Assembly: GCA_964234715.1 (NCBI GenBank)
Contig: OZ174288.1
Origin: Podarcis melisellensis
Taxonomy: Eukaryota
Length of the DNA stretch: 64,000 nt
Direction: 5' to 3' (one strand)
Shown here in pieces: positions 134-64,000 of the stretch. The notes under the pieces were generated by a model, which saw nothing but the letters and a program-made list of their open reading frames with translations, did not search any database and had not been told where the DNA came from. Both the position numbers and the translations under genes were made by a program. Positions within the stretch are counted from its first letter, which is position 1, and each line of letters starts with the position of its first letter.

Positions 134-566
134 CTGCAGGACAAAAAAAAATCTGGTCAGCATTCCCCTAGGATACAGAACCATCTAAACCAGCCTTTCT
201 CAACCTGTGGGTTCCCAGATACTGTTGGACTACAACTCCCATCACCACTAGCTAGCAAGGCCAGAGCTCAGGGATGATGGGAGTTGTAGTCCAACAACAT
301 CTGGGGACCCACAGGTTGAGAACCACTCAAATCAATCCACCTATTCTATAAAAAAACATTTATTTTAGCAATTTTAGCCCATCCCTCCAACGAGTTCGGG
401 GAAGCACACCTGGCTCCCTCAATAGCCGTAAAACAACCTGTAAGGTAGGCTAAGGAGAGTGAGAGAGCCCTTTAATTGGCTAGGAAACCACCCCAGTAGA
501 GACCTCTGAGTTTGTTGGAACAAGTCTGGTCTTGTCCTCTGCTGGTAAATCAAAATTTGCCATGTA

Positions 567-3900: not shown

Positions 3901-4436
3901 AACAGCAGCATTTAGGTGCAGAAGCCACAAGGGGGCCAAATACCTCTGCTCCCTTTCCCTCCATTGCTCCTTCTCTTTACTACAAACAGTAGCGGGCAGA
4001 AGGTTATACTACGGTGCTTGCGCAGAAAAAGCAGACAGAGATTTCCCCCCCTCCTTCTGGGGCCATCCAGCGAAGCTGGTGGGTGGAAGGTTCCAGACAA
4101 AAGTACTTATTTATGTTCTTGAACGATGGAATTTCTTGCCACAGGATGTGCTGATAGTGATCGACTTACACAACTTTAAAAGTAGGTTAGACAGGTCAAA
4201 TTCCTTTCGGCGCACCCATTGTCAGAATTGTAGGTTGTAAGCATCTTGAGGCATGGAACCTGATCCCCCCCACCGGGCCTCACTCTGTATGCTAGGGGTG
4301 GCAAACACATAGGTCCTAGAACCTCATGTGCCTCCAATCAATTTTTTTCTGGCCCTAAAGGGAATTCTACCTGCTTCTCCCCTCCTCCAAGACATGCCCC
4401 CATAACAGAGGTATAGTGGTATAGTCATGTTTACTA

Positions 4437-4910
4437 AAGTGGTACCTTGGGTTAAGAACGTAATTCGTTCTGGAGGTCCGTTCTTAACCTGAAACTGTTC
4501 TTAACCTGAGGTAGCACTTTAGTTAATGGGGCCTCCCGCTGCCACCGCATGACTTCTGTTCTCATTTTGAAGCAAATTCTTAACCTGAGGTACTATTTCT
4601 GGGTTAGCAGAGTCTGTAACCTGAAGTGTCTGTAACCTGAGGTACCACTGTACTATTACAGTCATACCTCAGGATGAATACGCTTCAGGTTAAGCATTTT
4701 CGGGTTGCGCTCTGCGGCAACCAGGAAGTAACAGAATGCGTTACTTCTGGGTTTCGCCGCTCGCGCATGCGCAGACACTCAAAATGACATCACCGGCATG
4801 CACAGAAGCGGCGAAATGCGACCCGCACATGGGCAGTCACGTGTTACGTTTACTTCAGGATGCGAACGGGGCTCTGGAACGGATCCCATTCGTATCCAGA
4901 TGTACCACTG
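4437..4910. mobile_element. Two adjacent Tigger-like MITEs (4437-4650 and 4659-4910)
   Basis: CAGTGGTAC...GTACCACTG-type termini, TA flanks. Confidence 0.75.
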
Positions 4911-5189: not shown

Positions 5190-6697
5190 CTACGGCAGAA
5201 AAGGAGGAGCACATAATTAAGGACTAGGCAACAGAACACCCAGAAGGCCTCAAGTTCAATCCCTGTCACTTTTGGTTCAAAAAGGACCAGGAAGTTGGTG
5301 ATGTGAAAACTTCTGCCTGAGGCCCTGGAGAGCCACCAGAAGTCAGGAGAGACAACACTGGCTTAGACAGGTAAGCAACTGCTTCCACCTGGGGAAGGAG
5401 AGCACCTCAATGTTAGAGCAACTGCCCTGCATGCAGGAGGTCCCAGGTTCAATGCCCAGGTACAGCTGGCAATGTTCCCTATCAGAAACTCAGGAGAGCT
5501 GCTGCCTGTCAGTGTAGACAATATGGAGCTAGATGGACCACCGAGAAAGCACATGGGTTTCTGGGAACTGTGAAAGGTGCCAGGAACTGTGGCTACCTGA
5601 GAGGTAAACTACAGTTCCCAGGATTCTCTAGGGGAAGCCAAGTACTTTATATGTTTGGCATGGATGTGAGGCAACATCGTACATCCCACCGCCACACACA
5701 AACTTCATTGCCCAAAATAGGTACCAAAGTTTGAGGTAGGGTTCCAAGACCAATTACTAGGATGAAGAGAAAAAACGTAGCACTATGTTTTATCAGAAGA
5801 CACTGTGTTGTTTCTCCAGATCATGGGCAGGCAAACTAAGGCCCGGGGGCCGGATCCGGCTCAATTGCCTTCTAAATCCTGTGGATGGTCTGGGAATCAG
5901 CGTGTTTTTACATGAGTAGAATGTGTGCTTTTATTTAAAATGCATCTCTGGGTTATTTGTGGGGCATAGGAATTTGTTCATTCTCCCCCCCTAAATATAG
6001 TCCGGCCCCCCACAAGATCTGAGGGACAGTGGACCAGCCCCCTGCTGAGAAAGATTGCTGATCCCAGCTCCAGATGTTACTGGACTACAACTCCCATCAG
6101 CCTCTACCACCATGCCTAACTATCAGGGATGATGGGAGCTGTAGTCCAACATCATCAAGGGACTCAACTCTGGAGAAGGCTAACTTAAAGCAAAGAGATA
6201 GCCGCACAAATGCCAGGAGTCTTGCAAATCTGAGGGAAAGGGGTCAGCCTTACTCATAGAGACTTGTCCAGGCTTCAGGCCTAGTTCTTATAAATGAATG
6301 AGACAGCAGACCCATGTCTGGAATATACACTTTCAGGCCACTTGTGAGGGTTCAATATTCCTTCACAAAAAGAAAAGAAGACCACACTAGCAGGTTGCCT
6401 AGAATCCATCTCCAGCAACATCTGGATAGTTTTCCTTGTATACTGAACTATTTTGTACTGAACAGTCATGTGAATTCCCATCTGCCGTCTTAAGTAGTAC
6501 AGGCCAGACACAGGTTTACCAGACACCGCTGCACATGAAACTTAGGTGTGTCTCAACGTTAAGTCTGTGACCAAAGGATAGAGATTTAAAAGTGGGATCT
6601 TACAGGGCTGGATCAATGGGAAGGAAGGACCATAGGGGAAGTGTATACATTCAGAAGGGGACATGGAGATGGTTCAAACACTGGAAATCTCCCCCAC

Positions 6698-7203: not shown

Positions 7204-7290
7204 CTTGGGGAAAGGGTGAAGAGAAAGAGATTGCACCGGATCCAAGCCCGTTATCATTCAGTAGCAAGCTTGCCAAGCCAATTATATATA

Positions 7291-7505
7291 CAGTGGTACC
7301 TTGGGTTGTGAGCTTAATTCGTTCTGGAGGTCCGTTCTTAACCTGAAACTGTTCTTAACCTGAGGGACCACTTTAGCTAATGGGGCCTCCCGCTGCAGCA
7401 GCGTGATTTCTGTTCTCATCCTGAGGTAAAGTTCTTAACCCGAGGTACTATTTCTGGCTTAGCAGGGTCTGTAACCTGAAGTGTCTGTAACCCGAGGTAC
7501 CACTG
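7291..7505. mobile_element. Tigger-like MITE; same family at 28216-28457, 63584-63822 and the split copy 25511-26457
   Basis: TA|CAGTGGTACC...GGTACCACTG|TA. Confidence 0.85.
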
Positions 7506-7565
7506 TAGTAGAAGATTATGGTTTTCGTTGTTGTTAAAAGCACATTCTCAGGGTTTCTAAGTTAC

Positions 7566-7711: not shown

Positions 7712-8654
7712 CTAGACAGCGAGAGAGAGAGAGAAGATAAAGCAGAAATGTGTGTGAGAGTAAGAAAAATAGATGTTCAACTCCCTTGTGGCTGACATCA
7801 GAAAAGAAGTGGCTCCCAGTCATTGCGCTGTAGCAAGTAAGAGCAACTTTATTATTTGACACAATAATATTTATTTATCTGATATATTTATGTACTGCCT
7901 AATGCCAAAATAAGCTTCAAAGCAGTTTGCAGGTATGAAAATGCGAGCATGAAAACAAAGCAGCCATAATCAGAATACAAAACCAAAACATGGAATAAAA
8001 CAGCCCCATTTGAACACTGAAATATAAATAACCACAATTAAAATACACAGTGAAACGATCCCATTAAAACCACGCAGCAATTAAAACAGGAGACTCAGGC
8101 CGAGAAAAATGTTTGAGTTGACAGGTACCCCAAAAGATGATATGTAAAATAGAAAATGCAAAGATAATTAAAAATAAAATAGAAATAAACCAGATTAATG
8201 AAACCTCTGCACCTCTCCTTAGCAAATGCTTTGAATAAAATCTCTACAGATTTTAACCCTAAACTAAGTTGAGGGGATTGTTTTTCCTACACACCCAACT
8301 ACCTACGACCTCACCCTTTTAACCTGAGATGCAAGGCTGCAGAACCATGCAAGCTATGGTTCTGCTCATCCCGGTTCAGTTGTAGAAGAGTCAATCCTAT
8401 GAACGGGTTCAAAGTTTTTTTCTTTTTGCAGGCCTGGTTCAACTTCCAATGGGGCTAATGTTCCAGACCTGCTTGGATACCTACTCTGCTGCTTCTAAAG
8501 CAGGCACAGGCAAACTCCGGACCTCCAGATGGTTGGGACTACAATTCCCATCATCCCTAGCTAACAGGACCAGTGGTGAGGGATGATGGGAATTGTAGTC
8601 CCAAACACCTGGAGGGTCAGAGTTTGCCTATGCCTGTCCTAAAGGGAGCCTCAC

Positions 8655-11382: not shown

Positions 11383-11992
11383 CTGAAGTGAGGGGGGAAA
11401 CGTGTAGCCTTCAGGAATGGCAACTGTTGATTTTATATGTTTGTCTATTTAATTTTGTATTTTATATAAATTTCCACCGTGCCCTTCCTCCCAAACGGGA
11501 GCCCAGAGCGGCAAATAACACCTGTAATTTAAAAAATAAAACAAAAACGTATTTAAAGTATTCTGCCTGCCCCTGCCTGCCAGAGGCTACTGCTGCAAAG
11601 TTGCCCTCATGGGTATGTATCTCTTGGGGAGGGATGAAAAAAGTTCTAGATCAGTGCTTCTTCAGCTGTTTTTGAACTACAACTCCCATCATCCCTAGCT
11701 AGCAAGACCAGTGGTCAGAGATGATGGGAATTGTAGTCCAAAAACAAATGGAGACCCAAAGGTTGGGAAACAACTGTTCTAGATTGTATCCAATACTACT
11801 CCAACTCAAAAGAAGACACACTGAAATTAATGAACCTAAAATGAGTTGTGTTCATTAGTTTCAATGGGTCTACACTGAGTAGGACCAGCACTGGCTAGAG
11901 CCCTCTGAATTCCTGATGCAGATCAGCTGATGGATGGATGGACTAACACTCTCTTGCCATACGCAAGAATCCCGAAGGCAAATAGGTGTTAC

Positions 11993-13179: not shown

Positions 13180-15406
13180 CTGAAAAAGGAAAAAGAAGGA
13201 AGGGGGAGAGAGCAGTCAGAAAAATATTTTTGTCAAGTATTGAGTTTACCAGGAAAAAAAACACCTCAATATACTCTAGGCACGAACTAAGCACCAACCT
13301 CTGGCAAAATTAGCAACGCTGCTCTTACAAAGCAGCTTTTAATCCACCAATACATAATCACAGAATTGTAGAGTCGGAAGGGACCCCATGGGTCATCTAG
13401 TCCAACCCCCTGCAATGTAGGAATCTCAGCTAAAGCGTGTTGCGATCCGATTGCTTGCTCAGCCTAATAAGAACCACTAATCAACCTAGCCTGGTTCTCG
13501 TGACACATTCAATCAGGGACCAGGAACTTCAGGCTTGGGCTGCACATGTGGCCCTCCAAGTCTCGCTATCTGGCCCTCTCTCCAGCCTACACTTTCTCCC
13601 CAGGCCAACACCCTTCACTAGCTTGACTTTGCACTGTCCTTGAGTATTTTTGCCTGGCTGGAATTTGCCCTTCAACTCTCATCATTCCTCTTCCTTGCCT
13701 GGATGGAGGACAGAGAGGGGTGTGCGAGTCAGTGCATACTGTACAAAGGAAAAAATTATACCCATTGCCCAACTTTTGCACCTCACCCTGCACGGCAGTG
13801 GCATGTGGCCCTGGGAAGATTGCCAAGAAGGAAACACACATCTTTTGTTCTGAAAAAGGTTCCCTGCCCCAGTTTTAAACAATAGGTTAAAGTAAACTAG
13901 GGCTTAATGTGAGCTTACACTTTGCTCCTCCACTGCTCTTAACTTCAGTGCCCCCAGAGAGGAAATAAACTAGAGGTTGACTTGCCGTTACATGTGAACC
14001 ACTGCTTATGGTTTGTCTGTCTCCTGGCAAATCATGATGGTAAGAACAAACCATGGTTTACTAGGAAACCACGAGTGCCGGTTTGCACATAAACTGGGCT
14101 AGGGAGAGGCTGCCTGATGTTGAAGCTGGGCTTCTAACACTTATAAAGAATAACCTCTGCAATAGCAATACTATCCCTCTAAGGTAGCTTTCTTAACCTG
14201 TGGGTCCCTAGATGTTGTTGAACTATAACTCCCATCACCCCTAGCTAGCAAGGCCAGAGCTCAGGGATGATGGGAGTTGCAGTCCAACAACATCTGGGGA
14301 CCCACAGGTTGAGAACCGCTGCCTAAGGCAAGGGGCGACAATAGCTTTGGCCTGGTGGGTCAAAGCCCGGTGCTGTGGGTGCCAGTCACAAAAAAGCTGA
14401 TGTAGCATGACAGCTTCAACGTAGGATAGGTCCATCCAGGGCAAAGGTGAACTGGGCAGCAGCTGAGACCAAATAGTCTCTTGTGCACTGCAGATTTTGA
14501 AGAGGATATTTACTGATACCTTTTGTTGGTCTCCTAGGTGATGTTGGTGGCCACAATGATGTCCACGGACACAATTTTTGCGGCCTGTCCTCTAAGGCTA
14601 CAATCCTAGACATGCTCACTTGGGTGTAAACCCCACTTAAATCAGTGGAAACAGACTACTCGCTATACTTCATAGGGGACAAGTCCCTCTGAAATCAGTG
14701 CAACTTCCAAACAACCGCAGTTAACAAACTCTGCACATTTTATCTATTAATAACCACAATGCACAGAACTATCACAAGAAGAATAACACAATAATGAAGG
14801 TTGCTTGACGTCAATACAGATTTGCAGGTACAAGAATCTTTTTGTTATTATTTATTAAATTTGTCTACTAAAGCTAACGAGCCATCTGTTGCTACCCAAA
14901 TCTAAGGACTTCCCGGCGCTGTTGGATTCCAACACCCACCATTCCAGCGACTGGAGGGTTAATCAGTTGTTAATTTGATGTGCGCTCCAGCATCAGCATA
15001 AAAAGAGTGCAGAAGGGTTATAAGAAAAGATAACTGGAATGGTAGCTGTAATATTCCCAAAATGGAATAAGTAGTACTAGGAGAAACAACCTTGCCGTGA
15101 CGTCACAGACACTATCCAATAGGCGCCTATACAGCAGAGCAACTGCTGAGTCAACATAAGGCTGCTTGCTTGTACACTCACAGTTCCTGGGTAAACCTAG
15201 CCTTTGGAGATGCCCTGAAGGCCTTTGACCTAGTGGTCCCTGCTTTCTACTACAAATAGCAGCCCCAGCTCAACGCCCCCTGGGTAGCAAGTATGAATGC
15301 AGCAATGTATTATGGAAGCAAGACAGTAACCCCTCCCCTTCAACATTGCTCCCTCCCTCCCTCCTCGCAAGAGGACGTGGATCCCTTTTCGATATTTTGC
15401 ACCTAC

Positions 15407-25371: not shown

Positions 25372-26554
25372 CCTGCCCATCTGGCTGAGTTTCCCCAGCC
25401 ACTCTAGGCAGCTCCCAAGAGAATATTAAAAACATGATAAAACATCAAACATGAAAAACTTCCCTAAACAGGGCTGCCTTCAGATGTCTTTAAAAAGTCA
25501 GAGTTGTTTACAGTGGTACTTCAGGTTACATACGCTTCAGGTTACAGACTCCGCTAACTCAGAAATAGTGCTTCAGGTTAAGAACTTTGCTTCAGGATGA
25601 GAACAGAAATCATGCTCTGGCGGCGCAGCGGCAGCAGGAGGCCCCATTAGCTAAAATGGTTAAGAACAGTTTCAGGTTAAGAATGGACCTTCAGAACGAA
25701 TTAAGTACTTAACCCTGTAGCAGGAACCCCCCCCCCCAATCATTCAGTTTGTACAAACTTCACACACACTCACACTCACACACTACATATGTACGTTTCT
25801 GTTATAAATTCATAGAAAATCAACCATACATCGGATTTGCACTGTTCCACTTTTATTTTACTCCATGAAGGAAGGACTACAAAATGGGGAAGGTTTGATA
25901 CAGGCCAGCCATAATCCCTTGAACATCCCAGCACATCCACAGGAGCCCTGCCCAGTTGCTATGCCAACCCTGATGGTCTTAGACAGAAGACAATCAAAAT
26001 CACAAAGAACTTGCATATGGGAGTGGATTCAGCATGGACTGGAACAAAGGACAATGATCAGATCTTCCCTCTGGGGGCAGGAAACTGCCACTACATTTTG
26101 TCTTCTGAAAATGGCTCATGGGGAGGGGGGAGAAGGGAATCAGCCAGGTGACAGGACACTCAGGTTACCACCACAATTCCTCCCTCAACCCCTCCTTTCT
26201 GTAATGTATGTATGATGTTTCTGGGGGTGGGCTTGACCTACAGGATGGGAATTTCAAAAGTTTTTATAAGGTCTTGCACACCATTTTTTCTGTGTCTTTC
26301 CTCTCTCCTGCAAGTGAGGGGAATACCCTGTTGCAACAGTTCAATAAAGGCCAAGCCTACAGGCTGCTGTTTTGCTCCAATTTACTCTGGTTGGTGTCTT
26401 TAATTTTTGTCCAAGGGAGCCCTCGGATTTTTCCAGTAACAACCCAAGGTACAACTGTATTTCCTTGACATCTGGTGGGAGGGCGTTCCACAGGGCGGGC
26501 GCCACTACAGAGAAGGCCCTCTGCCTGGTTCCCTGTAACATGCTTCTCACAGTG
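25321..26554 (-). mobile_element. L2 3' fragment split by a Tigger-like MITE and an LTR (L2 parts 25321-25508 and 26458-26554)
   Basis: Both parts are colinear with the L2 copy at 48921-49860; (AAT)n tail. Confidence 0.85.
25716..26441 (+). mobile_element. Solo LTR (726 bp)
   Basis: TG...CA termini, 4-bp TSD ACCC, TATAA at 26265, AATAAA at 26343; core shared with the LTR at 20797. Confidence 0.85.
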
Positions 26555-28150: not shown

Positions 28151-31100
28151 AGTTTGTGTTAAGAAACATTTTTCTTATTCTGGGATCAGTTACACCTTAT
28201 TTTAAAATAAAAGTACAGTGGTACCTCGGGTTAAGTACTTAATTCGTTCCGGAGGTCCATTCTTAACCTGAAACTGTTCTTAACCTGAAGCACCACTTTA
28301 GCTAATGGGGCCTCCCACTGCCGCCGCGCCACCAGAGCCCGATTTCTGTTCTCATCCTGAAGCAAAGTTCTTAACCCGAGGTCCTATTTCTGGGTTAGCG
28401 GAGTCTGTAACCTGAAGCGTCTGTAACCTGAAGCGTATGTAACCTGGGGTACCACTGTATGCAAGAGTGGGGACTCATCATATATTGGTTCCCAGGAATG
28501 GTAGTTTTCTATAGAAAGATTTATGTATTAAAGTAATATTCCGCCCTTCCTCCCAAAGGAGCCCACTGTGGCAAACACATCAACCTTAAAACAATACAGT
28601 AAAAAGTGCCAGTTATTTCACAACAACATACTTTTCTACATAATAATTTTAAGGCTTCAAATTTAAGATTTTAAACAGTCCAGAAGCTGTTACACGAGAA
28701 GTAGGATTTCTTCCAGTTACTGTTAGAGCTCCCAAGCTAAACATTCCAAGGGTTGTTTTTATATTAAAAAAAACAAAACAACGAGCTGTATTTCCTGCCT
28801 TAAAAAGGCAGCTCAGAAAGGCTTGTCTGCTTTCCCTTTCTGTTTTCCCTGTTAAAAATTGGACAGTGCAAAAATTCAGCCAGCCCGGCTACGCTGATTG
28901 AAAAGGCTTCCAAAACAGTTTAAACATTTAATATGATTTTTTTGAATAAAAAGTTTAATACTGTCTGGGGGAATAGTAGGTACAAAATATACGTAATTTA
29001 GATACACCCCCCCCCCGTACAATAGAAATGTTTTGTTTGTAGTTATTTACATTGCACATATGCCAGAGCCTTGTGAGTTGGTGAGACGTGTTAAACAAAA
29101 GGAACCAGAGTTGGAAGGTTGTGAATTGAACTTTGAGTCTCCCAGAATTGAGTCTTGAGTCTTCCTAAGAACCTGCGTTGTTTTAGGTCAGGCTCCGAAT
29201 TACGATTGCCTTTTCTATGGTGGTAGAATTCCACTCGCCCTCTCTCAGCAAGGCCTTGTTATGGTTTATTCGTCCAACAATTCTAGAGAATTAGAATTCT
29301 AGAATCCTCTGGGGGTCCAGATTCCTCTGGACTAGAGCTCCCACCAGCCCTGTCCATTGGCCATACTGGTTGAGGTTGATGGGAGTGGGAGTCTTAACAG
29401 GCTCACGGGTTCCCACTACCTCTGATCCCCCTTACCATTGGTTCCTGGTCATGATGGCTGCACTGAAACTCTGGGTTCAGAGGCAGCATATTTATTATTT
29501 TTAGCAGGGATGGGGAACCTCAGGTCCAGGGGCCAAATGCGGCCTTCCCAGCCTGTCGCGGACTGGGTTGGACACAGAGGAATGGTGGGAGGAATCACCA
29601 AGGGAAGGAGGCTCAGAGCCCGGGGCATGGTGGTGGGACAACAATGATTGGTCAGAGGGAGAAGAGGGAGTTGATAGGGTTGATGGGAGTTGTAGTCTAC
29701 AATGTCTGGAAGGGCCACTGTTTTTAAAAGTCCCTAAAATGGCAGAGATAATATAGTTTGGTGTGGAGTGGGCTATTTAGCTGGCTTGCATTTTTTCCCC
29801 TTTTTATAATTTTATTTATAGTTTCCGTTTATATAGATTTCAATAGTTTAACAATATTTGTAACATTTCAAACCTTGACGTCCTCCTCTTTCTGCGGTTC
29901 CTTAAATTTATTTTTATCATTTCCTGCACATTCTAAATTAACTTACTGTTTTATTCATCTATTTTAATTATATATTACAGTAATCCTGCCAATGTCTTTA
30001 TCTGTTTACAACTTGTTTGTAAAATGTTCAATAAACCATTTCCATTCTTTTACAAAAAGTTTATTATTTTGATTTTTTATTCTTCCGGTAAGTTTCGCCA
30101 TTTCTGCATAGTTCTGCATTCCGGAGCTCCGGTCGGATCCCGAGGTTTCCGCAACTGGAGGTGCCACTTCTGCGCATGCGCATGGTGTGTAGAGCGCTCC
30201 TGTGCATGCGGCAAAACCCAGAAGAATACTTCTGGGTTTGCTGCTTTCGCAACCCGAAGTTTACGTTACCTGAGCATAAGCCGAGGTTCTACTGTACTTG
30301 CTGGGGGAGTGAGGAATGTATTCAGCCCCAACCCCTCACCCCAAAGCACAACATATCTGAGGCTTGTGTGCCTGTAAGAAGCATTTTTTCCTTGATGGAA
30401 ACATCAGCTTCAAGGAAAGGTTATCTTGTTCCCTTGCAACAACTCATAGCCACAGTAAAAAATAGCTCAGGAAAGGGTGCTTTGGGACAAAAATTCCAGT
30501 TCGAGTTCAAAGGGTGATGAGCTCATGCTTCTTTAGTAATCCTGTGGGAAGTTCAGCTTGCGGTTAAGGAGGATGGATGGATGGGAAAAATGTTCTGAAA
30601 TCTGAGTGACCTGAGGGCCACCCACTCCCTTCTGGGGGGCCGCATGCTACTGTGGGTGGGGTGAGGGGCAAGAGTGGGTTGAGCAACGAATGTCCACCTT
30701 TGTACAGGCAAGAAAGAGGAATTACGAGAGTACAGGGGGCACAGTCCAGTCAGGCAAAGTGACCTGAAGGCCAGAATGGCTTGGAGTGATCTCTGTGGAG
30801 AGAGAGAGCGACTGTTAAACCATTTTGAGTACAGTGGTACCTTGCTTCCCAAACTTAATTTGTTCTGGAAGTCCGTTCTAAAACCAAAGTGTTCTAAAAC
30901 CAAGGTGCGCTTTCCCATAGAAAGTAATGCAAAAGGGATGAATCCGTTCCAGACTTTTAAAAACAACCCTTAAAACAGAAATTTAACATGAATTTTACTA
31001 CCTCTGTGGTTGTTCTGTTAATGGTTCTCTTGGCTTTGCAGCTTTTATCCATTTCTGCAGTCACACAATCAGTTAATCAGTAGCTGAACTGGGTTCTATG

Positions 31101-32398
31101 CTATGAAACTGGGTTTGTCACTAAAACAAAATTGAACAAAAAAGCCACAAAAATGCAAAAACAAAAGCATCAAATATAAGCTCCAAATATCTAATCGGAA
31201 GCAGGGTACTCAAATCAGAAACGGAAAACTCAAACAGGAAGAGGAATACTCCAATCAGAAATGGAGGACCAAAAATGGAACACGTTCGGCTTCCGAAAAA
31301 AAGTTCTCAAACTGGAACAGTCACTTGTGGGTTTGCAGCATTCAGGTTCCAAGTTGTTGGAGAACTAAGCTGTTTGAAAACCAACATACCACTTTATTGC
31401 CACTCTGCCATATTTGACAGGCAGACGGGGACAAAACAGCCTCGCTGGCCAAATGGACCTCACTGGTGGGCCTAGTTAGGCCTGTGGATTGAAGGTTCCT
31501 TACCCCTCCTTTAAATATAATAAATCTTTCTAATAGTGAACTTGGGTGGTGTGGTAGTCAAAACTGAGGGGAGCTGGCAAAGAGGCTTGAGGGAATCCCG
31601 AGGCTTTCAAAAACCTACTTTTAAAAAGAAATTCCAAAGAGGGCATGAAGGGTGGTATACGAATTTAATAAACACTCCATTAACACCACAGTAAGGACTG
31701 AGCGTGTGCCATGGAGGGCAGAGCAGGCTTCCCCAATCTGGTGCCCTCTGGATGTTGTTGGGCTCCATACTCCAAGCCACCCCAGCCGGCATGCCTGGTG
31801 GTCAAGCAAGATGGGAGTTGTAGTCCAGCAAACATCTGGAGGGCCACAGATCTTGGCTCCCAATGTAGAGCGATGCTGATAATTAACCTCCATGGGGGGG
31901 TGTTATTTGGGGGTCACAGCGGGTAAACGAGTTTAATTCCAGGTAGCCCCACATGTTGATAGCAATGTCTGATGGCCATGTGACAAGCCCCAGGGCTGGG
32001 TGTGAAAACACACGCAGAGAAGGCTTTGAGTAGTGACACCTGTGGCACAGCCATCTTGCCTGTGAGATCCTGGGTGCGTGATGTTTTTTAAGCAGGAGGA
32101 GGTAGGCTGTTTTTTAAATTATTATAAAGCACTTATCCATTTTCTTGGCTGGGAACTGGGACCCTTGGCTGAGTTCTCAAACTGTAGGTTTTCTTTTGCC
32201 ATTTCCGTGGTACTAAAGTATGCTCTTTGAAGTTAATAATTAGCCGAGTGTACGTCCGTAGGCCTGAAAACTGAGGAGAACTGAAACCGAGGAACAGTTT
32301 GCTATTGCATATGGTGAATATTAAGTCTTATCTGGAATACTTTGTCCCAGTTCCATCTTGATGAGTGCATGAGAGCTTGAGTGAATGCCAGGAAGCAC

Positions 32399-32400
<2 letters not shown>

Positions 32401-32456
<56 letters not shown>
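32401..32456. repeat. (GA)n microsatellite
   Basis: Read directly. Confidence 0.98.
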
Positions 32457-32460
<4 letters not shown>

Positions 32461-34325
32461 ATGAATCCACAAAAATACCAACCCATAAAGATTTATCAGC
32501 TATGTGGTCACTTGGAAGCAAGGCAGGGGGAGGGCCCCACTGTCCTATTTATTGCCTGTGTTAACACAGATCTGTCCTTCACTTCCCCCACCCTTGTCTC
32601 ATTTAATCATTTTGGAAAGCTGACTTTATTCAATAGATAGAAATGCCTGAAATAAATAGTATTTTTCAATAATAAAAACACTCTGCGTTCAGACATCACA
32701 CCGAACCATAGTTTATTTTTTGACAGTAATATTAAATATTACTAGTAATAATTAAACACAATGTGCAGTACTTCTCACATGTTATAAGTTACCTTATTTA
32801 TGTAATATACAGCGTCAGCTTATCTAAATATTTTTATTTCATTTTTATTTCATTGGGTAGTGGGAACGCAGGGGGAGATTAATTATGGTTATGAAATAAA
32901 AGAGTGAAGATTGGGTGCAGCAACGGGATGAATTTAAAAACAAAACAAAAAACAAACTACCACTGAAAATGGGGCGGGAAGTCAGTAGAACAAAAGAAAG
33001 AATTATGTATTGGAAATTTATGTGATTTTTTTTTGGAAATTTAATAAAATATATATTTTTTGAAAAGAAAGCGTTGGTGTTCGGAAGGCATGGGGTGAAC
33101 TGTAGAGCAGCATTCAGAAAATGCTTATCAATTTCTGTAACTAATAGATAAGAGAATTCAGGAGAGGTATGTCTCTACATGCAAACAGTTTCTGTTTGCT
33201 TAAAGTCTCTGTACAGTCTTTTTTTGCATGCTCCCCCCCCATAAAAAAACATCAGCTGACTGACTTCTCCACTGAGCAAACAAAAATGTGACTTGACCTG
33301 AATCCAGACTCTGGAAGAGTAATGTTCCCAAGAAAAAAAAAGAGGATTCTCCTTTAACTTTTGCAACCACAGCACTAGTGTTCCCTGTGTCTGGCAACAC
33401 TATAGTGAGGGTAGCCATCTGATGGGTCTCAAACCCTCTGTGAGTTAGGGGCGTCGCCTGCATGCGAAGACATGGGCTGGTGGATTGAGCAGATGAGAGC
33501 AATAGTGGGTCCAGTGGTCATGAAGGCAGTTTCCGCACATGCTGTGTAGGGGGGAAGATGGAACTCGTCTACCTGGGAAGGCAGCCTATCTAGGAGAAGG
33601 AAAACTCTGATTCTAAATCTCCACTGCCTTGGCGGAGTATCTTCAGGAGAAGAAAAGTCTAGGGAGTGTCATCTTCTTTGGCGATCACTCATAGCCAAGT
33701 AAGATTGTCTTCCATGGTTTTAACAATGAGTCCACAAGTGACTGTGGAGGCCAGTTCTGGATCCACATGTCCTTCCACTGTGGGGACATTGGTTTCCGGG
33801 CGGGAGTTGATCACGGTGTGGATTTGCCAAGCATGCCTTCCTCTTAGTATGTTTCTCCCTTGCATCCTGAGTTTGAGTGTCTTCCAAGCCCATGACACCT
33901 TTAGTAAAGGCTGGTCTCCAATCGGAGCACTTGCAGGCAAGTGTTTCCCAATTGTTGGTGTTTTACTACATTTTTAAAGACTTGCCTTGAGACAGTCTTT
34001 AAACCTCTTTTGTTGACCACCAGCATTATGCTTTCCATTACACTAGGGAATGTAAGCCCTACACAAAGCCAGAGTGAGGTCTCTAAGATGGTTTGATGGT
34101 ACCTTGTGTGCCGCCTCCTGGCAACTCCTGCAGCCAAGCTGGTGCCAAACGTCTTGGTCTGCTTCCCTTTGGACCACATCAGCGAGGCCAAGAGGGGAGT
34201 CTTGTCATCCGGCCAGCCCAGGACCTCCATACATACAGCCCAGGTTTGCACCCCAGAGAGGTCACTTTGGTGCGGCTAACACAGTGGTTTGACTTAACCC
34301 CCGGAGACACACTCCATTGTCTCTC

Positions 34326-34829
34326 TCTCTCTCTCTTTTTTAATAAATATTTTTTATTAAGGTTTCAACAAAATTAACAAAACACAACATAAAAGCACAA
34401 CACAAAACATAATAAAACATAAAACATATATAAGTTCAATTCTTAATTTCTTGTACCTTACTTTCCCGACTTCCTCATACCTCCCCTTTCTGTATTCCAA
34501 TTTCAAATTTATTTTCAGCAAATCCTTCCCTTATTTTTAGCTTACTTTTAATATTGCTTACTCTCCTTAATTTAACCGTTGTCGCTATTAACTCCTTCAT
34601 TTCTAATCCAACATCATTTTAACACTCATTAATTTTGCTATATTTCTTTAAATAGTCCTTAAATTTTCTCCAATCTTCTTCCGCCGTTTCTCTTCCCTGG
34701 TCTCGGATTCTCGTCATCTCGGCCAAACCCATATAGTCAATCACCTTCATCTGCCATTCTTCCACGGTGGGTAAATCTTGTGTCTTCCAGTACTTTGCGA
34801 TGAGTATTCTTGCTGCTGTTGTGACACAC
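34326..34829 (-). mobile_element. L1/Tx1-like LINE 3' fragment
   Basis: ORF2 end TTAARILIAKYWKTQDLPTVEEWQMKVIDYMGLAEMT...WRKFKDYL*, AT-rich 3'UTR, AATAAA, A/(GA)n tail. Confidence 0.8.
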
Positions 34830-34862
34830 ATACTTACCTGGCAAGGGAGATACCATGATCAC
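34830..34862 (+). pseudogene. U1 snRNA 5' fragment (nt 1-33)
   Basis: ATACTTACCTGGCAAGGGAGATACCATGATCAC; 32/33 identical to the canonical vertebrate U1 5' end ATACTTACCTGGCAGGGGAGATACCATGATCAC. Confidence 0.93.
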
Positions 34863-34976
34863 ACTCCATTGTCTCTCAAGGCAGACAGATGTTGACAGCT
34901 TTGGCCTTGCCTCTAAATTTCCAAAATGTTTTTAAAGCAACTTAACGTGCACCTTTTCTGCTTCTTCCCCCACCAG

Positions 34977-35091
34977 GATATGTTGTGCCTTCGGGTCCAC
35001 CGGCGCATAACTACCCCAACACCACGTACACGATAATCCAGCAACCTCCCACCACGTCCGTCGTTGTCGTTGGCGGCTGCCCAGCTTGCAG
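34977..35091 (+). CDS. BRI3: BRI3 coding exon 2
   Basis: caccag|GA TAT...YVVPSGPPAHNYPNTTYTIIQQPPTTSVVVVGGCPACR|gtatta; 115 nt. Confidence 0.93.
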
Positions 35092-38000
35092 GTATTATGA
35101 CCGTTCTCATTTCTGTTACACCTCTTCTCTCTTTTTAAGTCTGGCCTGTTAACAATCCATGTGAAGTTGGAGTGGGGAGGTTTGCAGCAAGAGAGATTAG
35201 AGTCTCTTCCCCCTATATATATTTTTTTAAATAAAAAACTAGCATTTTTCTTGTCAGGAAATGGCTGCCGTGCGGGTGTGGCAGAACACAAAATGGCTGC
35301 TCCCAGGGTTCCTCAGACAGATCCTTCTATTGGACAACAGACCTGTGTTGCTTGTCCTGTTTTCCAGTAACTAGCCTCCTGCCCTTAGGTGGCAGTGGAA
35401 GATTTTTGCTTTTCACCAGTGATTCAACAGCCCACCCAGTCTGCTTCTATATGTGTCGTAGACCCCAGGTTTCTGAAAGACCTCCTCCTGCAGAGACCCT
35501 TTTGGGAGTTAAGATCAGCAAAGTGGACCCTCTTGATAGTTCTTACCTCCCTCAGACGTTTGGTAGGTGGTGATCTGAGAGAAGGCATTCTCTGCAGCAG
35601 CCCCTTGTTCTTGAATTTCTCTTCCTCACCCCGAGGTGTGCCTGCTACTCTCACTATACAGCTGAAGTTTGTGCCTCTTTATGCTGGCCTTTGGCACCTG
35701 AGCTGTATATTTTTTGGACCCACTCCAGTTGTGATCATAATGAACTGTTTTAATAAATACAAGTGCTAAGTGCAATAGTGATGTTGTATTATTATAACAG
35801 TGGTTCGTTTTGCTCCAGACACCAAATAATCCTTTCTCTCGGGGGAGCGAAATGTCTCAGTACGTAACTAGACTTTGATGGTTCCCCAACCATTGGCCAA
35901 ATTGACTGGGGCTGGTGGGAGTTTTATCCCAGCACTCACAAGTCCCCCCACTCTTGCCTGGACCAACATGTCGAAGCTGCTGAGCAAGGAGCAGCTTGCA
36001 CCAGTCAAGTCCTTAGCCAGCGGATTCCACGTTGCAAAGATCATGACTTTAATTGGCTTATTTGTTAGCAGCGTTGAAAAGCAAGGTCAGGGTGTTTTTC
36101 GAGACCAGAGACAAAAGGCCAAGCACGCCTGGAGTATCCACCCTAGTGATAAACTGACCACTTTGTTTTTTATTGTATTATTACTTTTTTTCAAACCTAT
36201 CTTCTGACTTCACTGAAGGATGTGTTATTAGTTTCCAGGGGGGGGGGAAATCTTTTGCATCCCCCTTAACCCAGAAAACGGCAGGAGTAACATGACAAAA
36301 TTCAAGGCAGCATCCCAGACTGAAGTTCTTCCGTGCCATTTTTGTGGGGGAGCAGAAGCAGGCATGTGTGGAAATGGATGCCCAACGTTGCCCAATGAAG
36401 TTTGTTCTTTCACATCATGCCCACGGGCGTGAATGAAATGCCAGTGTCTTGGCCAGAAAGCCACAGTCCCATATCACAACAGGTAGTGCAGTGTGAAAAG
36501 AACATTAGAAACAGGACAGAGGTGCTAGCATTATAATCAGGAAAACGAACACAATATTTCCCTATGTCTTAATGTGCCATAGGTGCAAAATGCCTGACTG
36601 GCCGTGAAATATTCTGGGGGGACAGACTCGCCGCTGACATTGTTTTATAATTCTTCAGTTCAAAGTAAAAGGGAATTTGGAGAGGAACACAAAATGTCGA
36701 ATGATCTTTGTCGGGAAGTATCAAGAGGGTGTTGTTGTTTTTGCAAAGGATAGGAGGGAATCACAAGTGTCATGAGATGAACTTTGTGGAGCCAGAGGGT
36801 GGGGAACTTGTTTACCCCTCAGATATTGCTGGACTCAGACTCCCATCATCTGGGGCTTTTGGACATGCTGGCTGGGCCTGATGATGGGAGTTTGCTTCCA
36901 ACAGCACAAGCTGGGAAACAGATTTCTCACCCCTGTTGTAGAGAGAAGGCACCTCTTTTCCCCTTGCAGCTGTAAGGAGTAAAGGGGTGAAGAGGAGAGG
37001 GCTGTTGGTGACCACTAGCCATGATGGCTGAGAACAGGATGCTAGACTAACCAGAAAGGCCATTGGAAGTTGATTTATACAGTGTCAGACCATTGGTCCA
37101 TCTAGCTCAGTACTGTCAACACGGACAGGTGGTGCAGCTCTGCAGGAGTGATTGAAGAAAGAGGGGAAAGGGAGTAGCTCCCCCCGCCAGCCAGAGGAAG
37201 CTGGCCCACTGGGGCAAGTGGGGCGCTGCCAACACCCACCCTCACCTGTCTGCTGCCTTACCTACTTCTTGTCCAAGAAGTGGCGCTCTTCCTTAGTGTT
37301 GCTTTTGTGAAATTCAGCAAGGGAGGGGGACAGAACTAGAATTAGTTGCCTCTGCCTGCTATTGGCTTTGCTTGGGTTCCTGGCCTTCTGTTCTGCCAGT
37401 CTCTACGGGCATCATCCTCCCTGGCTGCCAGCATGTGGCCCCTGATGGATCTCCCCCCCCTCTCCTCCCTGGAATGCAGTCCTTGATAGTAAAGATTCCC
37501 GTCTTTCGGTGTGGGAGATGCTAACTCTGAGAACTTTGTCACTGGCTTGGCAAAGGAGCAATAACATTTGACCAAAGGTGCTGCGGACAACTATTTAATA
37601 AATTCTAATAGTTCACCAAGCAGCAGCAGCAGCAGCAGCCAGGCAGCTCAAGTGAGGGCCCCTGCTTGTGGTATAAATAAACGCTGCCTATTTTTAGAGC
37701 CTCTGGGAGTGGCGTGGCTTTAAGCCACAGGAAAGCTGCTTAAGTTCTCCAGGCAAACTCTTACTTTATAGCTAAGATTAGCCTGTCTTTAAATGAAGCC
37801 TGTTACTGTACCCTTCCTGGCTTCCCCTTCCTTCATTATCTGATCTTAAGAGGCAACTCCCATGAAGGAAGCAGTGTGTTATTTGTGTTTCCAGAACTCT
37901 ATATGGGTAGCATTTAGCTAAGGCAGTATCCTGACTCCTGCCCTGTCCATGGAAACAGGCACTAACTTGGAGGTTAAGGCTATCAAGGGCTACTAGCCAT

Positions 38001-41378: not shown

Positions 41379-41511
41379 AGTTGGTGTATTGGAAGACACA
41401 TTCACCTGTCTCGGTGTCTTTTGTGCCATCGTATTCTTTCCTATTGGAATTCTCTTCTGTCTTGCATTGAGGCAACGAAGATGTCCTAACTGCGGTGCAA
41501 CGTTTGGTTAA
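41379..41511 (+). CDS. BRI3: BRI3 coding exon 3 with stop codon
   Basis: [43 protein letters not shown]; total CDS 414 nt = 137 aa; hydrophobic segment flanked by CxxC motifs. Confidence 0.96.
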
Positions 41512-41755
41512 GGGATCAACACAAATAGGTTTTTTGGAAGCTGTAACTATTGTAGTACCTTTTTTCTAATGTAAATGTCATGTACAATCAAGTTTATGCT
41601 TCAGAGATGATTTTGTAAAAGTGTGATGAAATTAGTCTGTCTCTTTCTCTTCTCTTGCATGCGAAACTGATCTATGAGCATGTGTGTGTGTGTGTAAGAC
41701 ACAAATCCACCCCCACCCCCCGCTTTCTGTTTAAAATGCACCTTTTGGAAATTTA

Positions 41756-63449: not shown

Positions 63450-64000
63450 TAAGCTTGGTGGATCAGGGTAATGTTATGGATGTAGTGTATCTTGATTTCA
63501 GTAAGGCTTTTGACAAAGTTCCCTATGATATTCTTACAGAATATCAAATGTGGTTTGAACAAGGTAACTTAGGTGGATTTGCACAGTAGTACCTTGGGTT
63601 ACATACGCTTCAGGTTACATACGCTTCAGGTTACAGACTCTGCTAACCCAGAAATAGTGCTTCAGGTTAAGAACTTTGCTTCAGGATGAGAACAGAAATC
63701 GTGCTCCGGCGGCGCAGCAGCAGGAGGCCCCATTAGCTAAAGTGGTGCTTTAGCTTAAGAACAGTTTCAGGTTAAGTACGGACCTCCGGAACGAATTAAG
63801 TATTTAACCCGAGATACCACTGTAGCTGGTTTTCTGACCAAACCCAAAGAGTGCTCACTAATGGTTGCTCATTATCCTGGAAAAAAGGACAAGTGGGGAG
63901 CTGAAGGATTCTGTCCTGGGCTCATTGTTGTTCATCTTTATAAACAACTTGGATGAAGGAATTGAGGGAATGCTCATCAAATTTGCAGATGACATGAAAC
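63450..64000 (+). mobile_element. CR1 LINE reverse-transcriptase fragment interrupted by a MITE
   Basis: MDVVYLDFSKAFDKVP... and FINNLDEGIEGMLIKFADD motifs. Confidence 0.85.

What the first reader, a model, noticed from the sequence alone, without database searches (positions are those of the whole stretch)
34308..34877. Inverted U1 snRNA/LINE chimera: apparent trans twin-priming on U1 RNA
Seen: an 18-bp direct repeat CACACTCCATTGTCTCTC (34308-34325 and 34860-34877) brackets a minus-strand L1/Tx1-like 3' fragment with an A/(GA)n tail, joined at its truncated 5' end to U1 nt 1-33 in the OPPOSITE orientation. The U1 piece starts exactly at U1 nt 1, and its last 3 nt (CAC) overlap the TSD. Known: U6/L1-type template-switch chimeras and snRNA-headed SINEs carry the snRNA in sense; L1 5' inversions come from twin priming on the same RNA. 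Inference: the second-strand 3' end (...GTG) annealed to U1 nt 31-33 and was extended to the U1 5' end, then joined to the LINE cDNA. That would be twin priming in trans on a spliceosomal RNA, an unusual chimera class.
Basis: partly seen in the sequence, partly recalled or inferred. Interest (0 to 1): 0.8.

Follow-up and report, generated by a model that had tools for sequence, protein, structure and literature searches.

The report
Inverted U1 piece on lizard L1
A cut-short jumping gene (L1) in a lizard intron carries the first 33 bases of the splicing RNA U1 backwards at its broken end, a by-product of L1 insertion that has already been described in the human genome, so it is a tidy but ordinary example.

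Summary
An exact 18-bp duplication (34308-34325 and 34860-34877) brackets two things. One is a minus-strand, 5'-truncated L1 3' end: the ORF2 C-terminus, the 3'UTR, AATAAA, and an A6(GA)5 tail. The other is U1 snRNA nt 1-30 on the plus strand, or nt 1-33 counting a CAC shared with the duplication.

Three related L1 copies from a lacertid assembly read straight through the truncation point as ORF2 coding sequence. The U1-like stretch is therefore not part of the LINE.

The anatomy fits twin priming on U1 RNA:
- U1 starts at nt 1 at the inner junction.
- There is 3-nt homology at the priming site, in the loop of U1 stem-loop I.
- There is up to 3-nt homology (TAT) at the U1/L1 joint.
- The nick site looks L1-like (TCTC/AA) only in the L1 orientation.

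The class is not new. Doucet et al. 2015 list a human U1(1-40)/L1 "twin" chimera with a 17-bp TSD and 3-nt junction homology. Law & Burns 2026 generalise antisense small-RNA/L1 chimeras.

First-stage readers also noted two inverted snRNA/LINE chimeras (U6, U2) elsewhere in this genome. I did not check them.

Verdict: a new member of a known kind, of low to moderate interest.

The parts
34308..34325 (.). Target-site duplication, the copy next to the L1 tail (the 3' TSD in L1 orientation)
   Evidence: Exact 18-mer found only twice in the window, 0 expected by chance
34326..34335 (-). (GA)5 between the A-tail and the TSD, continuous with the (GA)3 that opens the TSD
   Evidence: Related L1 copies end in pure poly(A), so this is not a family tail. 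Its origin is unexplained (primer slippage or later microsatellite growth).
34336..34341 (-). Short A6 tail of the L1 fragment
34342..34618 (-). L1 3'UTR (277 nt, 72% A+T) with AATAAA at 34358-34353
   Evidence: blastn to L1 copies in L001 and L002 reaches query positions 11-85 (window 34336-34410), close to the tail. Sequence read.
34619..34829 (-). L1 ORF2 C-terminal coding remnant (...TTAARILIAKYWKTQDLPTVEEWQMKV...) plus stop codon; the 5' truncation point of the LINE lies at its upstream end
   Evidence: 59 representative proteins match at E<=0.001. One relative, P0045, aligns to human L1 ORF2p residues 682-1231 at E 7e-53. DNA alignment A2 to three lacertid L1 copies.
34823..34829 (-). 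Ambiguous 7 nt at the U1/L1 joint (GTGTGTC in L1 sense). It is either diverged L1 (4 of 7 match the relatives, and all 3 differences are transitions) or filler.
   Evidence: Alignment A2 together with the sequence
34830..34859 (+). U1 snRNA nt 1-30, inverted relative to the L1. Nt 1-3 (ATA) could equally be the complement of the L1 TAT, giving up to 3-nt junction microhomology.
   Evidence: Rfam U1 model position 1 aligns at 34830. Unique in the window. The relatives read TTTATGTATGCT at this point.
34860..34862 (+). CAC shared by U1 nt 31-33 and the TSD: the inferred priming microhomology, lying in the apical loop of U1 stem-loop I
   Evidence: The structure line of the Rfam U1 alignment puts these positions in the hairpin loop.
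34860..34877 (.). Target-site duplication, the copy next to the U1 piece
34977..35091 (+). Context: the middle coding exon of the host gene BRI3. The insertion lies in the preceding intron, 99 nt upstream of the 3' splice site.
   Evidence: Pfam PF10164 BRI3, E 4e-7, above the cut-off. Reptile and bird BRI3 proteins were hit. The last exon lies near 41390-41523.

Best explanation
This looks like a single L1 target-primed insertion into a BRI3 intron that produced an inverted U1/L1 chimera by twin priming in trans. Only the final anatomy is shown; every step below is inferred from it.

1. L1 endonuclease nicked the window's plus strand at GTCTCTC/AAGGCA.
2. The freed 3' end primed reverse transcription of an L1 RNA from its tail. 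This gave the plus-strand sequence 34326 to about 34829.
3. The other strand was cut 18 nt away, at ...GGAGTGTG/TCTCC.
4. Its 3' end, ...GTG, paired with C31-A32-C33 in the loop of U1 snRNA stem-loop I.
5. It was extended by the reverse transcriptase to the very 5' end of U1 (nt 1).
6. The two cDNA ends were joined, possibly through a 3-nt TAT/ATA overlap. Gap filling then produced the 18-bp duplication.

The product is inert: an L1 3' fragment with no complete gene and a promoterless 33-nt U1 piece.
For: - An exact 18-bp TSD encloses both parts.
- The U1 piece begins at model position 1 at the inner junction and is cut at nt 30-33 at the TSD, where 3 nt are shared.
- The shared bases lie in the stem-loop I loop of the Rfam consensus structure.
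- The L1 part is a true L1-clade ORF2 C-terminus with 3'UTR, AATAAA and A-tail.
- Three related L1 copies run through the truncation point as ORF2 coding sequence (...DRTFFMYATTAAR...) with nothing U1-like there.
- The nick site reads TCTC/AA, pyrimidines followed by AA, in the L1 orientation, but GTGTG/TC in the U1 orientation.
- No U1 gene or other Rfam RNA lies elsewhere in the window.
- A published human case has nearly the same anatomy: U1 truncated at nt 40, 623-nt L1, 17-bp TSD, 3-nt junction homology, labelled 'L1-twin' (model). The antisense bias of 5'-terminal small-RNA pieces in L1 chimeras is ascribed to twin priming.
Against: - No empty site was seen, so a single event is inferred only from the TSD bracketing.
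- The nick site is only a loose match to TTTT/AA, and the preference of lizard L1 endonuclease was not examined.
- Seven bases at the U1/L1 joint differ from the related L1 copies at 3 positions, while the next 32 nt are identical to two of those copies. The joint may hold filler rather than a clean overlap.
- The (GA)5 between the A-tail and the TSD is not explained.
- Priming by the top-strand end cannot be told apart from end-joining capture of a ready-made U1 cDNA.
Confidence: 0.75

Rival explanations
1. A short U1 cDNA, made elsewhere and run to the RNA's 5' end, was captured by microhomology-mediated end joining. It was ligated between the top-strand end and the L1 cDNA during repair of the insertion intermediate, and was not primed by the top-strand 3' OH.
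For: The product would be the same: an inverted U1 starting at nt 1, and 3-nt homologies at both joints, which are typical of end joining. The possibly non-L1 7 nt at the joint would fit a messy repair.
Against: It needs an extra, unexplained source of a U1 cDNA ending at nt 30-33. The published series of such chimeras has truncations in single-stranded loops and homology to the target, as expected for priming on the RNA.
Confidence: 0.1
2. This locus is a copy of an older composite element. The antisense-U1/L1 joint arose once elsewhere, and a transcript containing it was retrotransposed. That would make it one member of a family with the same joint.
For: Copy number could not be tested. The L1 3' end with its tail is what an L1 machine needs in order to mobilise an RNA in trans.
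Against: - The U1 piece would then have to end by chance exactly where it shares CAC with the target.
- A 33-nt U1 5' end carries no promoter, because U1 promoters lie upstream of the gene (established knowledge).
- No second copy exists in the 64-kb window or in 29 kb of related lacertid DNA that holds three L1 copies of this lineage.
- Law & Burns report that U6/L1 chimeras usually do not propagate further after insertion.
Confidence: 0.07
3. There were two separate insertions, an L1 fragment and a truncated U1 retropseudogene, that happen to lie side by side. Or the structure is an assembly artefact.
For: 3'-truncated snRNA pseudogenes are a common class in their own right, including in Anolis for U6. 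Raw reads were not inspected.
Against: - Only one TSD pair is present, and it encloses both parts.
- A second insertion would have had to land exactly between the L1 5' end and its TSD without making its own duplication.
- Misassembly does not create an 18-bp TSD with L1 polarity.
- Runs from three samples of the same organism hold 0.47-0.69 of the sampled words of the region, although this does not prove the joint.
Confidence: 0.05
4. The L1 reverse transcriptase switched template on the first strand, from L1 RNA to a second template, as in U6/L1 chimeras.
For: Template switching and RNA ligation are the usual routes to snRNA/L1 chimeras.
Against: Both routes give the snRNA in the same orientation as the L1. 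To write U1-sense DNA onto the first-strand cDNA, the enzyme would need an antisense-U1 template, which is not a known cellular RNA. Here the orientation is opposite.
Confidence: 0.03

Closest known systems
Human inverted U/L1 chimeras formed by 'twin priming' (Doucet et al. 2015, Mol Biol Evol, PMC4476161; Suppl. Table 1 row 1: U1_3'trunc-L1)
   Same: - The snRNA is 3'-truncated, starts at nt 1, and lies in the opposite orientation to a 5'-truncated L1 inside one TSD pair.
- TSD 17 bp versus 18 bp here.
- U1 cut at nt 40 versus 30-33 here.
- 3-nt homology between the snRNA and the target in both.
- L1 part 623 nt versus about 500 nt here.
- The endonuclease-like site is seen only in the L1 orientation.
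   Different: - The host is a lacertid lizard and the LINE is a reptile L1 lineage.
- The nick site is TCTC/AA rather than T-rich.
- A (GA)5 run follows a very short A-tail.
- Doucet et al. screened Anolis only for U6 copies, and describe the Anolis U6 chimeras as template-switching products.
Antisense 5S rRNA (nt 1-45) and tRNA-half (nt 1-37)/LINE-1 chimeras (Law & Burns 2026, Cell Genomics, PMC13174262)
   Same: A 5'-terminal piece of 30-45 nt from a small structured RNA lies antisense at the 5' end of an L1, inserted in a single event. The authors attribute it to twin priming.
   Different: Different RNA species, mammals only, and validated there by multi-species alignments, which I could not do here.
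Classical L1 twin priming, with a 5' inversion of the L1 itself (Ostertag & Kazazian 2001, cited)
   Same: The second-strand 3' end primes reverse transcription internally on an RNA. There is microhomology at the priming site and at the inversion joint.
   Different: The second template here is a different RNA (U1) rather than the same L1 RNA, so priming is in trans.
U6/L1 sense chimeras (template switch or RtcB RNA ligation) and snRNA-headed SINEs
   Same: A spliceosomal RNA sequence is joined to a LINE 3' part inside one TSD pair.
   Different: In those, the snRNA is in sense orientation and, for U6, full length. SINEs are multi-copy and carry a promoter. Here the piece is inverted, is 33 nt long, and has no promoter.

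Membership tests
Inverted snRNA/L1 twin-priming chimera (Doucet et al. 2015, Group IV 'twin') | The snRNA and LINE segments lie in opposite transcriptional orientation inside a single pair of target-site duplications | tested here: met
   U1 on the plus strand at 34830-34862, L1 on the minus strand at 34326-34829, 18-bp TSD at 34308-34325 and 34860-34877
Inverted snRNA/L1 twin-priming chimera (Doucet et al. 2015, Group IV 'twin') | The snRNA piece starts at its nt 1 at the inner joint and is 3'-truncated at the TSD | tested here: met
   Rfam U1 model position 1 aligns at 34830. Homology stops at nt 33 of about 164.
Inverted snRNA/L1 twin-priming chimera (Doucet et al. 2015, Group IV 'twin') | There is sequence homology between the snRNA truncation point and the target site | tested here: met
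   CAC (34860-34862) is both U1 nt 31-33 and TSD nt 1-3. The human cases have 1-4 nt.
Inverted snRNA/L1 twin-priming chimera (Doucet et al. 2015, Group IV 'twin') | The L1 endonuclease consensus appears at the first-strand nick when read in the LINE orientation, but not in the snRNA orientation | tested here: inconclusive
   The L1 orientation gives TCTC/AA (pyrimidine run, then AA). The U1 orientation gives GTGTG/TC. The polarity is right, but this is not the T-rich consensus, and the lizard enzyme's preference is unknown.
Inverted snRNA/L1 twin-priming chimera (Doucet et al. 2015, Group IV 'twin') | The event is single: the empty site has one copy of the TSD and neither part | not testable with these tools
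A flank-ORF protein search found nothing, and a metagenome scan for the flank found nothing.
Inverted snRNA/L1 twin-priming chimera (Doucet et al. 2015, Group IV 'twin') | The joint is a one-off, not shared by a propagating family | not tested
   Only the window and 29 kb of related lacertid DNA could be examined, and no second copy was found there.
L1-clade LINE | ORF2 C-terminal segment homologous to L1 ORF2p, with a 3'UTR, AATAAA and an A-tail, and a TSD of 10-20 bp | tested here: met
(59 relatives). P0045 matches human ORF2p at E 7e-53. The CCHC-type motif lies upstream in the relatives. The relatives' tails are poly(A).
U6/L1-type sense chimera (template switch or RNA ligation) | The snRNA is in the same orientation as the LINE at its 5' end | tested here: not met
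   The orientation is opposite
snRNA-headed SINE (SINEU type) | A sense snRNA-derived head with a LINE-derived tail, present in many copies | tested here: not met
   The head is inverted and only 33 nt long. Copy number was not tested.

The most novel reading that the evidence does not exclude
Inverted snRNA/LINE chimeras may be recurrent in this lizard genome and may involve more than one LINE clade. First-stage notes s1-508181 (U6/L1) and s1-508182 (U2 with a different LINE family) report two more, which I did not check. If so, priming on abundant nuclear small RNAs by the second-strand end would be a general property of LINE integration across amniotes and LINE clades, not an L1 or mammalian peculiarity. 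A further speculation is that U1 was at hand because U1 snRNP sat on the 5'-splice-site-like GUAUG that the related L1 copies carry exactly at the truncation point.
Probability: 0.2. Interest if true: 0.45.

Novelty: new member of a known kind. Interest (0 to 1): 0.25.

Why it matters
This is a clean non-mammalian example of a side reaction of LINE integration so far documented in mammals. It shows that a reptile L1 can use a spliceosomal RNA as the template for second-strand-primed reverse transcription. It adds a data point on where in U1 priming occurs (the stem-loop I loop, as for the human case at nt 40). It does not open a new mechanism. Its value would rise only if a genome-wide count showed such chimeras to be unusually frequent in lizards, or spread over several LINE clades.

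Tried and rejected
**Read laying.** I tried read laying on 32600-36600 with four runs. All later queries stop at 34827 or start at 34865. So there is no read-level check of the junctions, no empty site and no copy number.

**Orthologous loci through a flank ORF.** A search with the flank ORF 33904-34251(-) gave no hit.

**L1 piece.** The word-index protein search gave no candidate. Pfam and PDB sequence scans gave nothing meaningful. This is why I used the exhaustive representative search.

**BRI3 exon search for lacertid orthologues.** It returned only gecko, snake, crocodilian, turtle and bird BRI3 of 119 aa or less. These are too distant for intron comparison.

**Metagenome scan.** A scan for the right-flank 27-mer gave 0 hits.

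**Readings considered and rejected:**
- The U1-like stretch is part of the LINE: refuted.
- It is a fragment of a local U1 gene: there are no Rfam hits in the rest of the window.
- It is a sense template-switch chimera: the orientation is wrong.
- (GA)n is the family's native tail: the relatives end in poly(A).

Full report
**What is in the sequence**

The 18-mer CACACTCCATTGTCTCTC occurs at 34308-34325 and 34860-34877 and nowhere else in the window, even with two mismatches allowed. None is expected in shuffled sequence.

Just left of the right copy, the plus strand reads as the 5' end of U1 snRNA. Rfam's U1 model aligns from its position 1 at 34830. That score is weak (13 bits, E 0.1 on 101 nt) only because a fifth of the RNA is present. 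From my own knowledge of vertebrate U1, the match is 32 of 33, with A for G at nt 15. The last three bases (CAC) are also the first three of the repeat. The 30-mer is unique in the window, and no U1 gene or any other Rfam family reaches threshold in the rest of the window.

Between the repeats, the minus strand carries the following:
- a 70-codon open remnant (...TTAARILIAKYWKTQDLPTVEEWQMKVIDYMGLAEMT...);
- a 277-nt A/T-rich untranslated stretch;
- AATAAA;
- A6 and (GA)5.

**The LINE part is a true L1**

Word-index, Pfam and PDB sequence scans of the 68-residue piece gave nothing. I therefore used the exhaustive representative search, which found 59 relatives.

The longer relatives show the L1 ORF2 C-terminal layout. 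They have a C-x-x-C...H-x-W-W-x-C motif, then ...LLG...Y-A-T-A-A-R-I-L-x-A-x-x-W-K, which is where our fragment starts. One relative, P0045, aligns to human L1 ORF2p residues 682-1231 at E 7e-53.

**The LINE does not contain the U1-like stretch**

Two close relatives are gene models in the lacertid assembly GCA_947686815.1. Fetching them gave 29 kb of DNA with three L1 copies of this lineage, 72-84% identical to ours.

Aligned across our truncation point, all three continue upstream as ORF2 coding sequence...AGAACTTTCTTTATGTATGCTACAACAGCAGC....

Two of these copies, where the 3' end could be read, finish with AATAAA and plain poly(A). The (GA)5 in our copy is therefore not a family tail.

**Anatomy of the joints**

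Read in L1 sense, the inner joint is ...CCAGGTAAGTAT / GTGTGTC / ACAACAGCAGC... From ACAACAGC onward, 32 nt are identical to two of the relatives.

The seven bases before that match the relatives at 4 of 7 positions, and all three differences are transitions. The TAT that ends the antisense U1 is also what the L1 copies have at that point. So the joint has either up to 3 nt of microhomology or 7 nt of filler. Only the source subfamily could decide this.

At the outer joint, CAC is shared between U1 nt 31-33 and the target. In the structure line of the Rfam alignment these positions lie in the apical loop of stem-loop I.

The inferred pre-insertion site on the plus strand is ...CCCGGAGA|CACACTCCATTGTCTCTC|AAGGCAGAC.... 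The first-strand nick is therefore TCTC/AA. That is a pyrimidine run followed by AA, so it is L1-like in polarity though not T-rich. Read in the U1 orientation the site would be GTGTG/TC.

**Mechanism**

These features are what twin priming predicts if the second template is U1 RNA rather than the L1 RNA itself:
1. The top-strand 3' end ...GTG pairs with the loop CAC.
2. It is extended to the 5' end of U1.
3. The two cDNAs are joined.

Only the end product is observed; all the steps are inferred.

A first-strand template switch or RNA ligation would give U1 in sense and is excluded by the orientation. Two separate insertions would need a second event exactly between the L1 end and its TSD, without a duplication of its own. 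Capture of a ready-made U1 cDNA by end joining gives the same product and cannot be separated from priming here.

**What is already known**

It is not.

Doucet et al. 2015 (PMC4476161) describe '3'-truncated inverted' U1, U2, U5 and U6 pieces joined to 5'-truncated L1 or SVA inside one TSD pair. They draw exactly this model (their Fig. 1) and note homology to the target and truncation in single-stranded loops. Their Supplementary Table 1, row 1, is a human U1/L1 case with a 623-nt L1, a 17-bp TSD, U1 cut at nt 40 and junction homology of 3, labelled 'L1-twin'. That is almost a twin of the present locus.

Law & Burns 2026 (PMC13174262) catalogue antisense 5S (nt 1-45) and tRNA (nt 1-37) pieces on L1 and again invoke twin priming.

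For lizards, Doucet et al. screened Anolis only for U6 copies, and they describe the Anolis U6 chimeras as template-switching products formed with L1, L2, RTE and a SINE. A full-text search for 'twin priming' with 'lizard' found no report of an inverted snRNA chimera in a reptile. That is not proof that none exists.

**What could not be done**

These places are the U1 piece, which by my reading is the same as human U1. 

As a result, the empty-site test, the read-level check of the junctions and the singleton-versus-family test remain open.

One search shows that parts of the region are held by runs of seven organisms, at shares of 0.21-0.69. This cannot tell presence of the insertion from absence.

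The attempts to reach orthologous loci by other routes failed:
- a flank-ORF search found nothing;
- a BRI3 exon search returned only distant reptiles and birds;
- a metagenome scan for the flank found nothing.

**Context**

The insertion lies in an intron of BRI3, 99 nt upstream of the exon at 34977-35091 (Pfam BRI3, E 4e-7; named hits). The last exon lies near 41390-41523. The L1 is antisense to the gene, as is usual for intronic L1 fragments. I see no evidence of any effect on the gene.

**Earlier notes of this scan**

Two first-stage notes on other pieces of the same genome report an inverted U6/L1 chimera (s1-508181) and an inverted U2/other-LINE chimera (s1-508182). I could not read those loci, so they remain untested leads. 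If real, they suggest that the reaction is recurrent in this lizard and not confined to one LINE family.

**Verdict**

The proposed mechanism is well supported by the anatomy, but it was published before for human. This locus is a new, reptilian member of a known kind. Interest 0.25.

Noticed in passing
window 34326-34335: A (GA)5 run sits between the very short A6 tail and the TSD, which itself begins with (GA)3 in L1 sense. Related L1 copies end in pure poly(A). It could be slippage of the TCTCTC primer on the tail, or later microsatellite growth. It remains unexplained.
   Followed up: partly
window 34977-35091 and about 41390-41523 (+): Two coding exons of BRI3 (brain protein I3). The middle exon is ...GYVVPSGPPAHNYPNTTYTIIQQPPTTSVVVVGGCPACR and the last exon ends ...[11 protein letters not shown]. 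The first exon was not located.
   Followed up: partly
window 224-296, 1888-1960, 6079-6151, 8533-8605, 11671-11743, 14217-14289, 31758-31830 and others: A roughly 73-nt hairpin-forming repeat (GGACTACAACTCCCATCA...TGATGGGAGTTGTAGTCC) is present in at least 10 copies. It gives weak sub-threshold Rfam hits to the mir-5408 and mir-8515 models. It looks like a MITE-type palindromic element and not like miRNA genes.
   Followed up: no
window 4426-4700, 7280-7510, 25509-25715, 28205-28460, 63583-63825: A SINE-like repeat family (ACAGTGGTACCTCGGGTTAAG... with CTGTAACCTGAAG repeats) occurs in both orientations, with copies 85-97% alike.
   Followed up: no
L001 3001-7237 and L002 3001-16244 (GCA_947686815.1): The annotated gene models P0001 (124 aa) and P0002 (245 aa) in this lacertid assembly take their last exon from L1 ORF2 C-terminal fragments. 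They look like transposon-derived mis-annotations or exonised L1 pieces.
   Followed up: no
window 32401-32460: A (GA)30 microsatellite, 96% pure.
   Followed up: no
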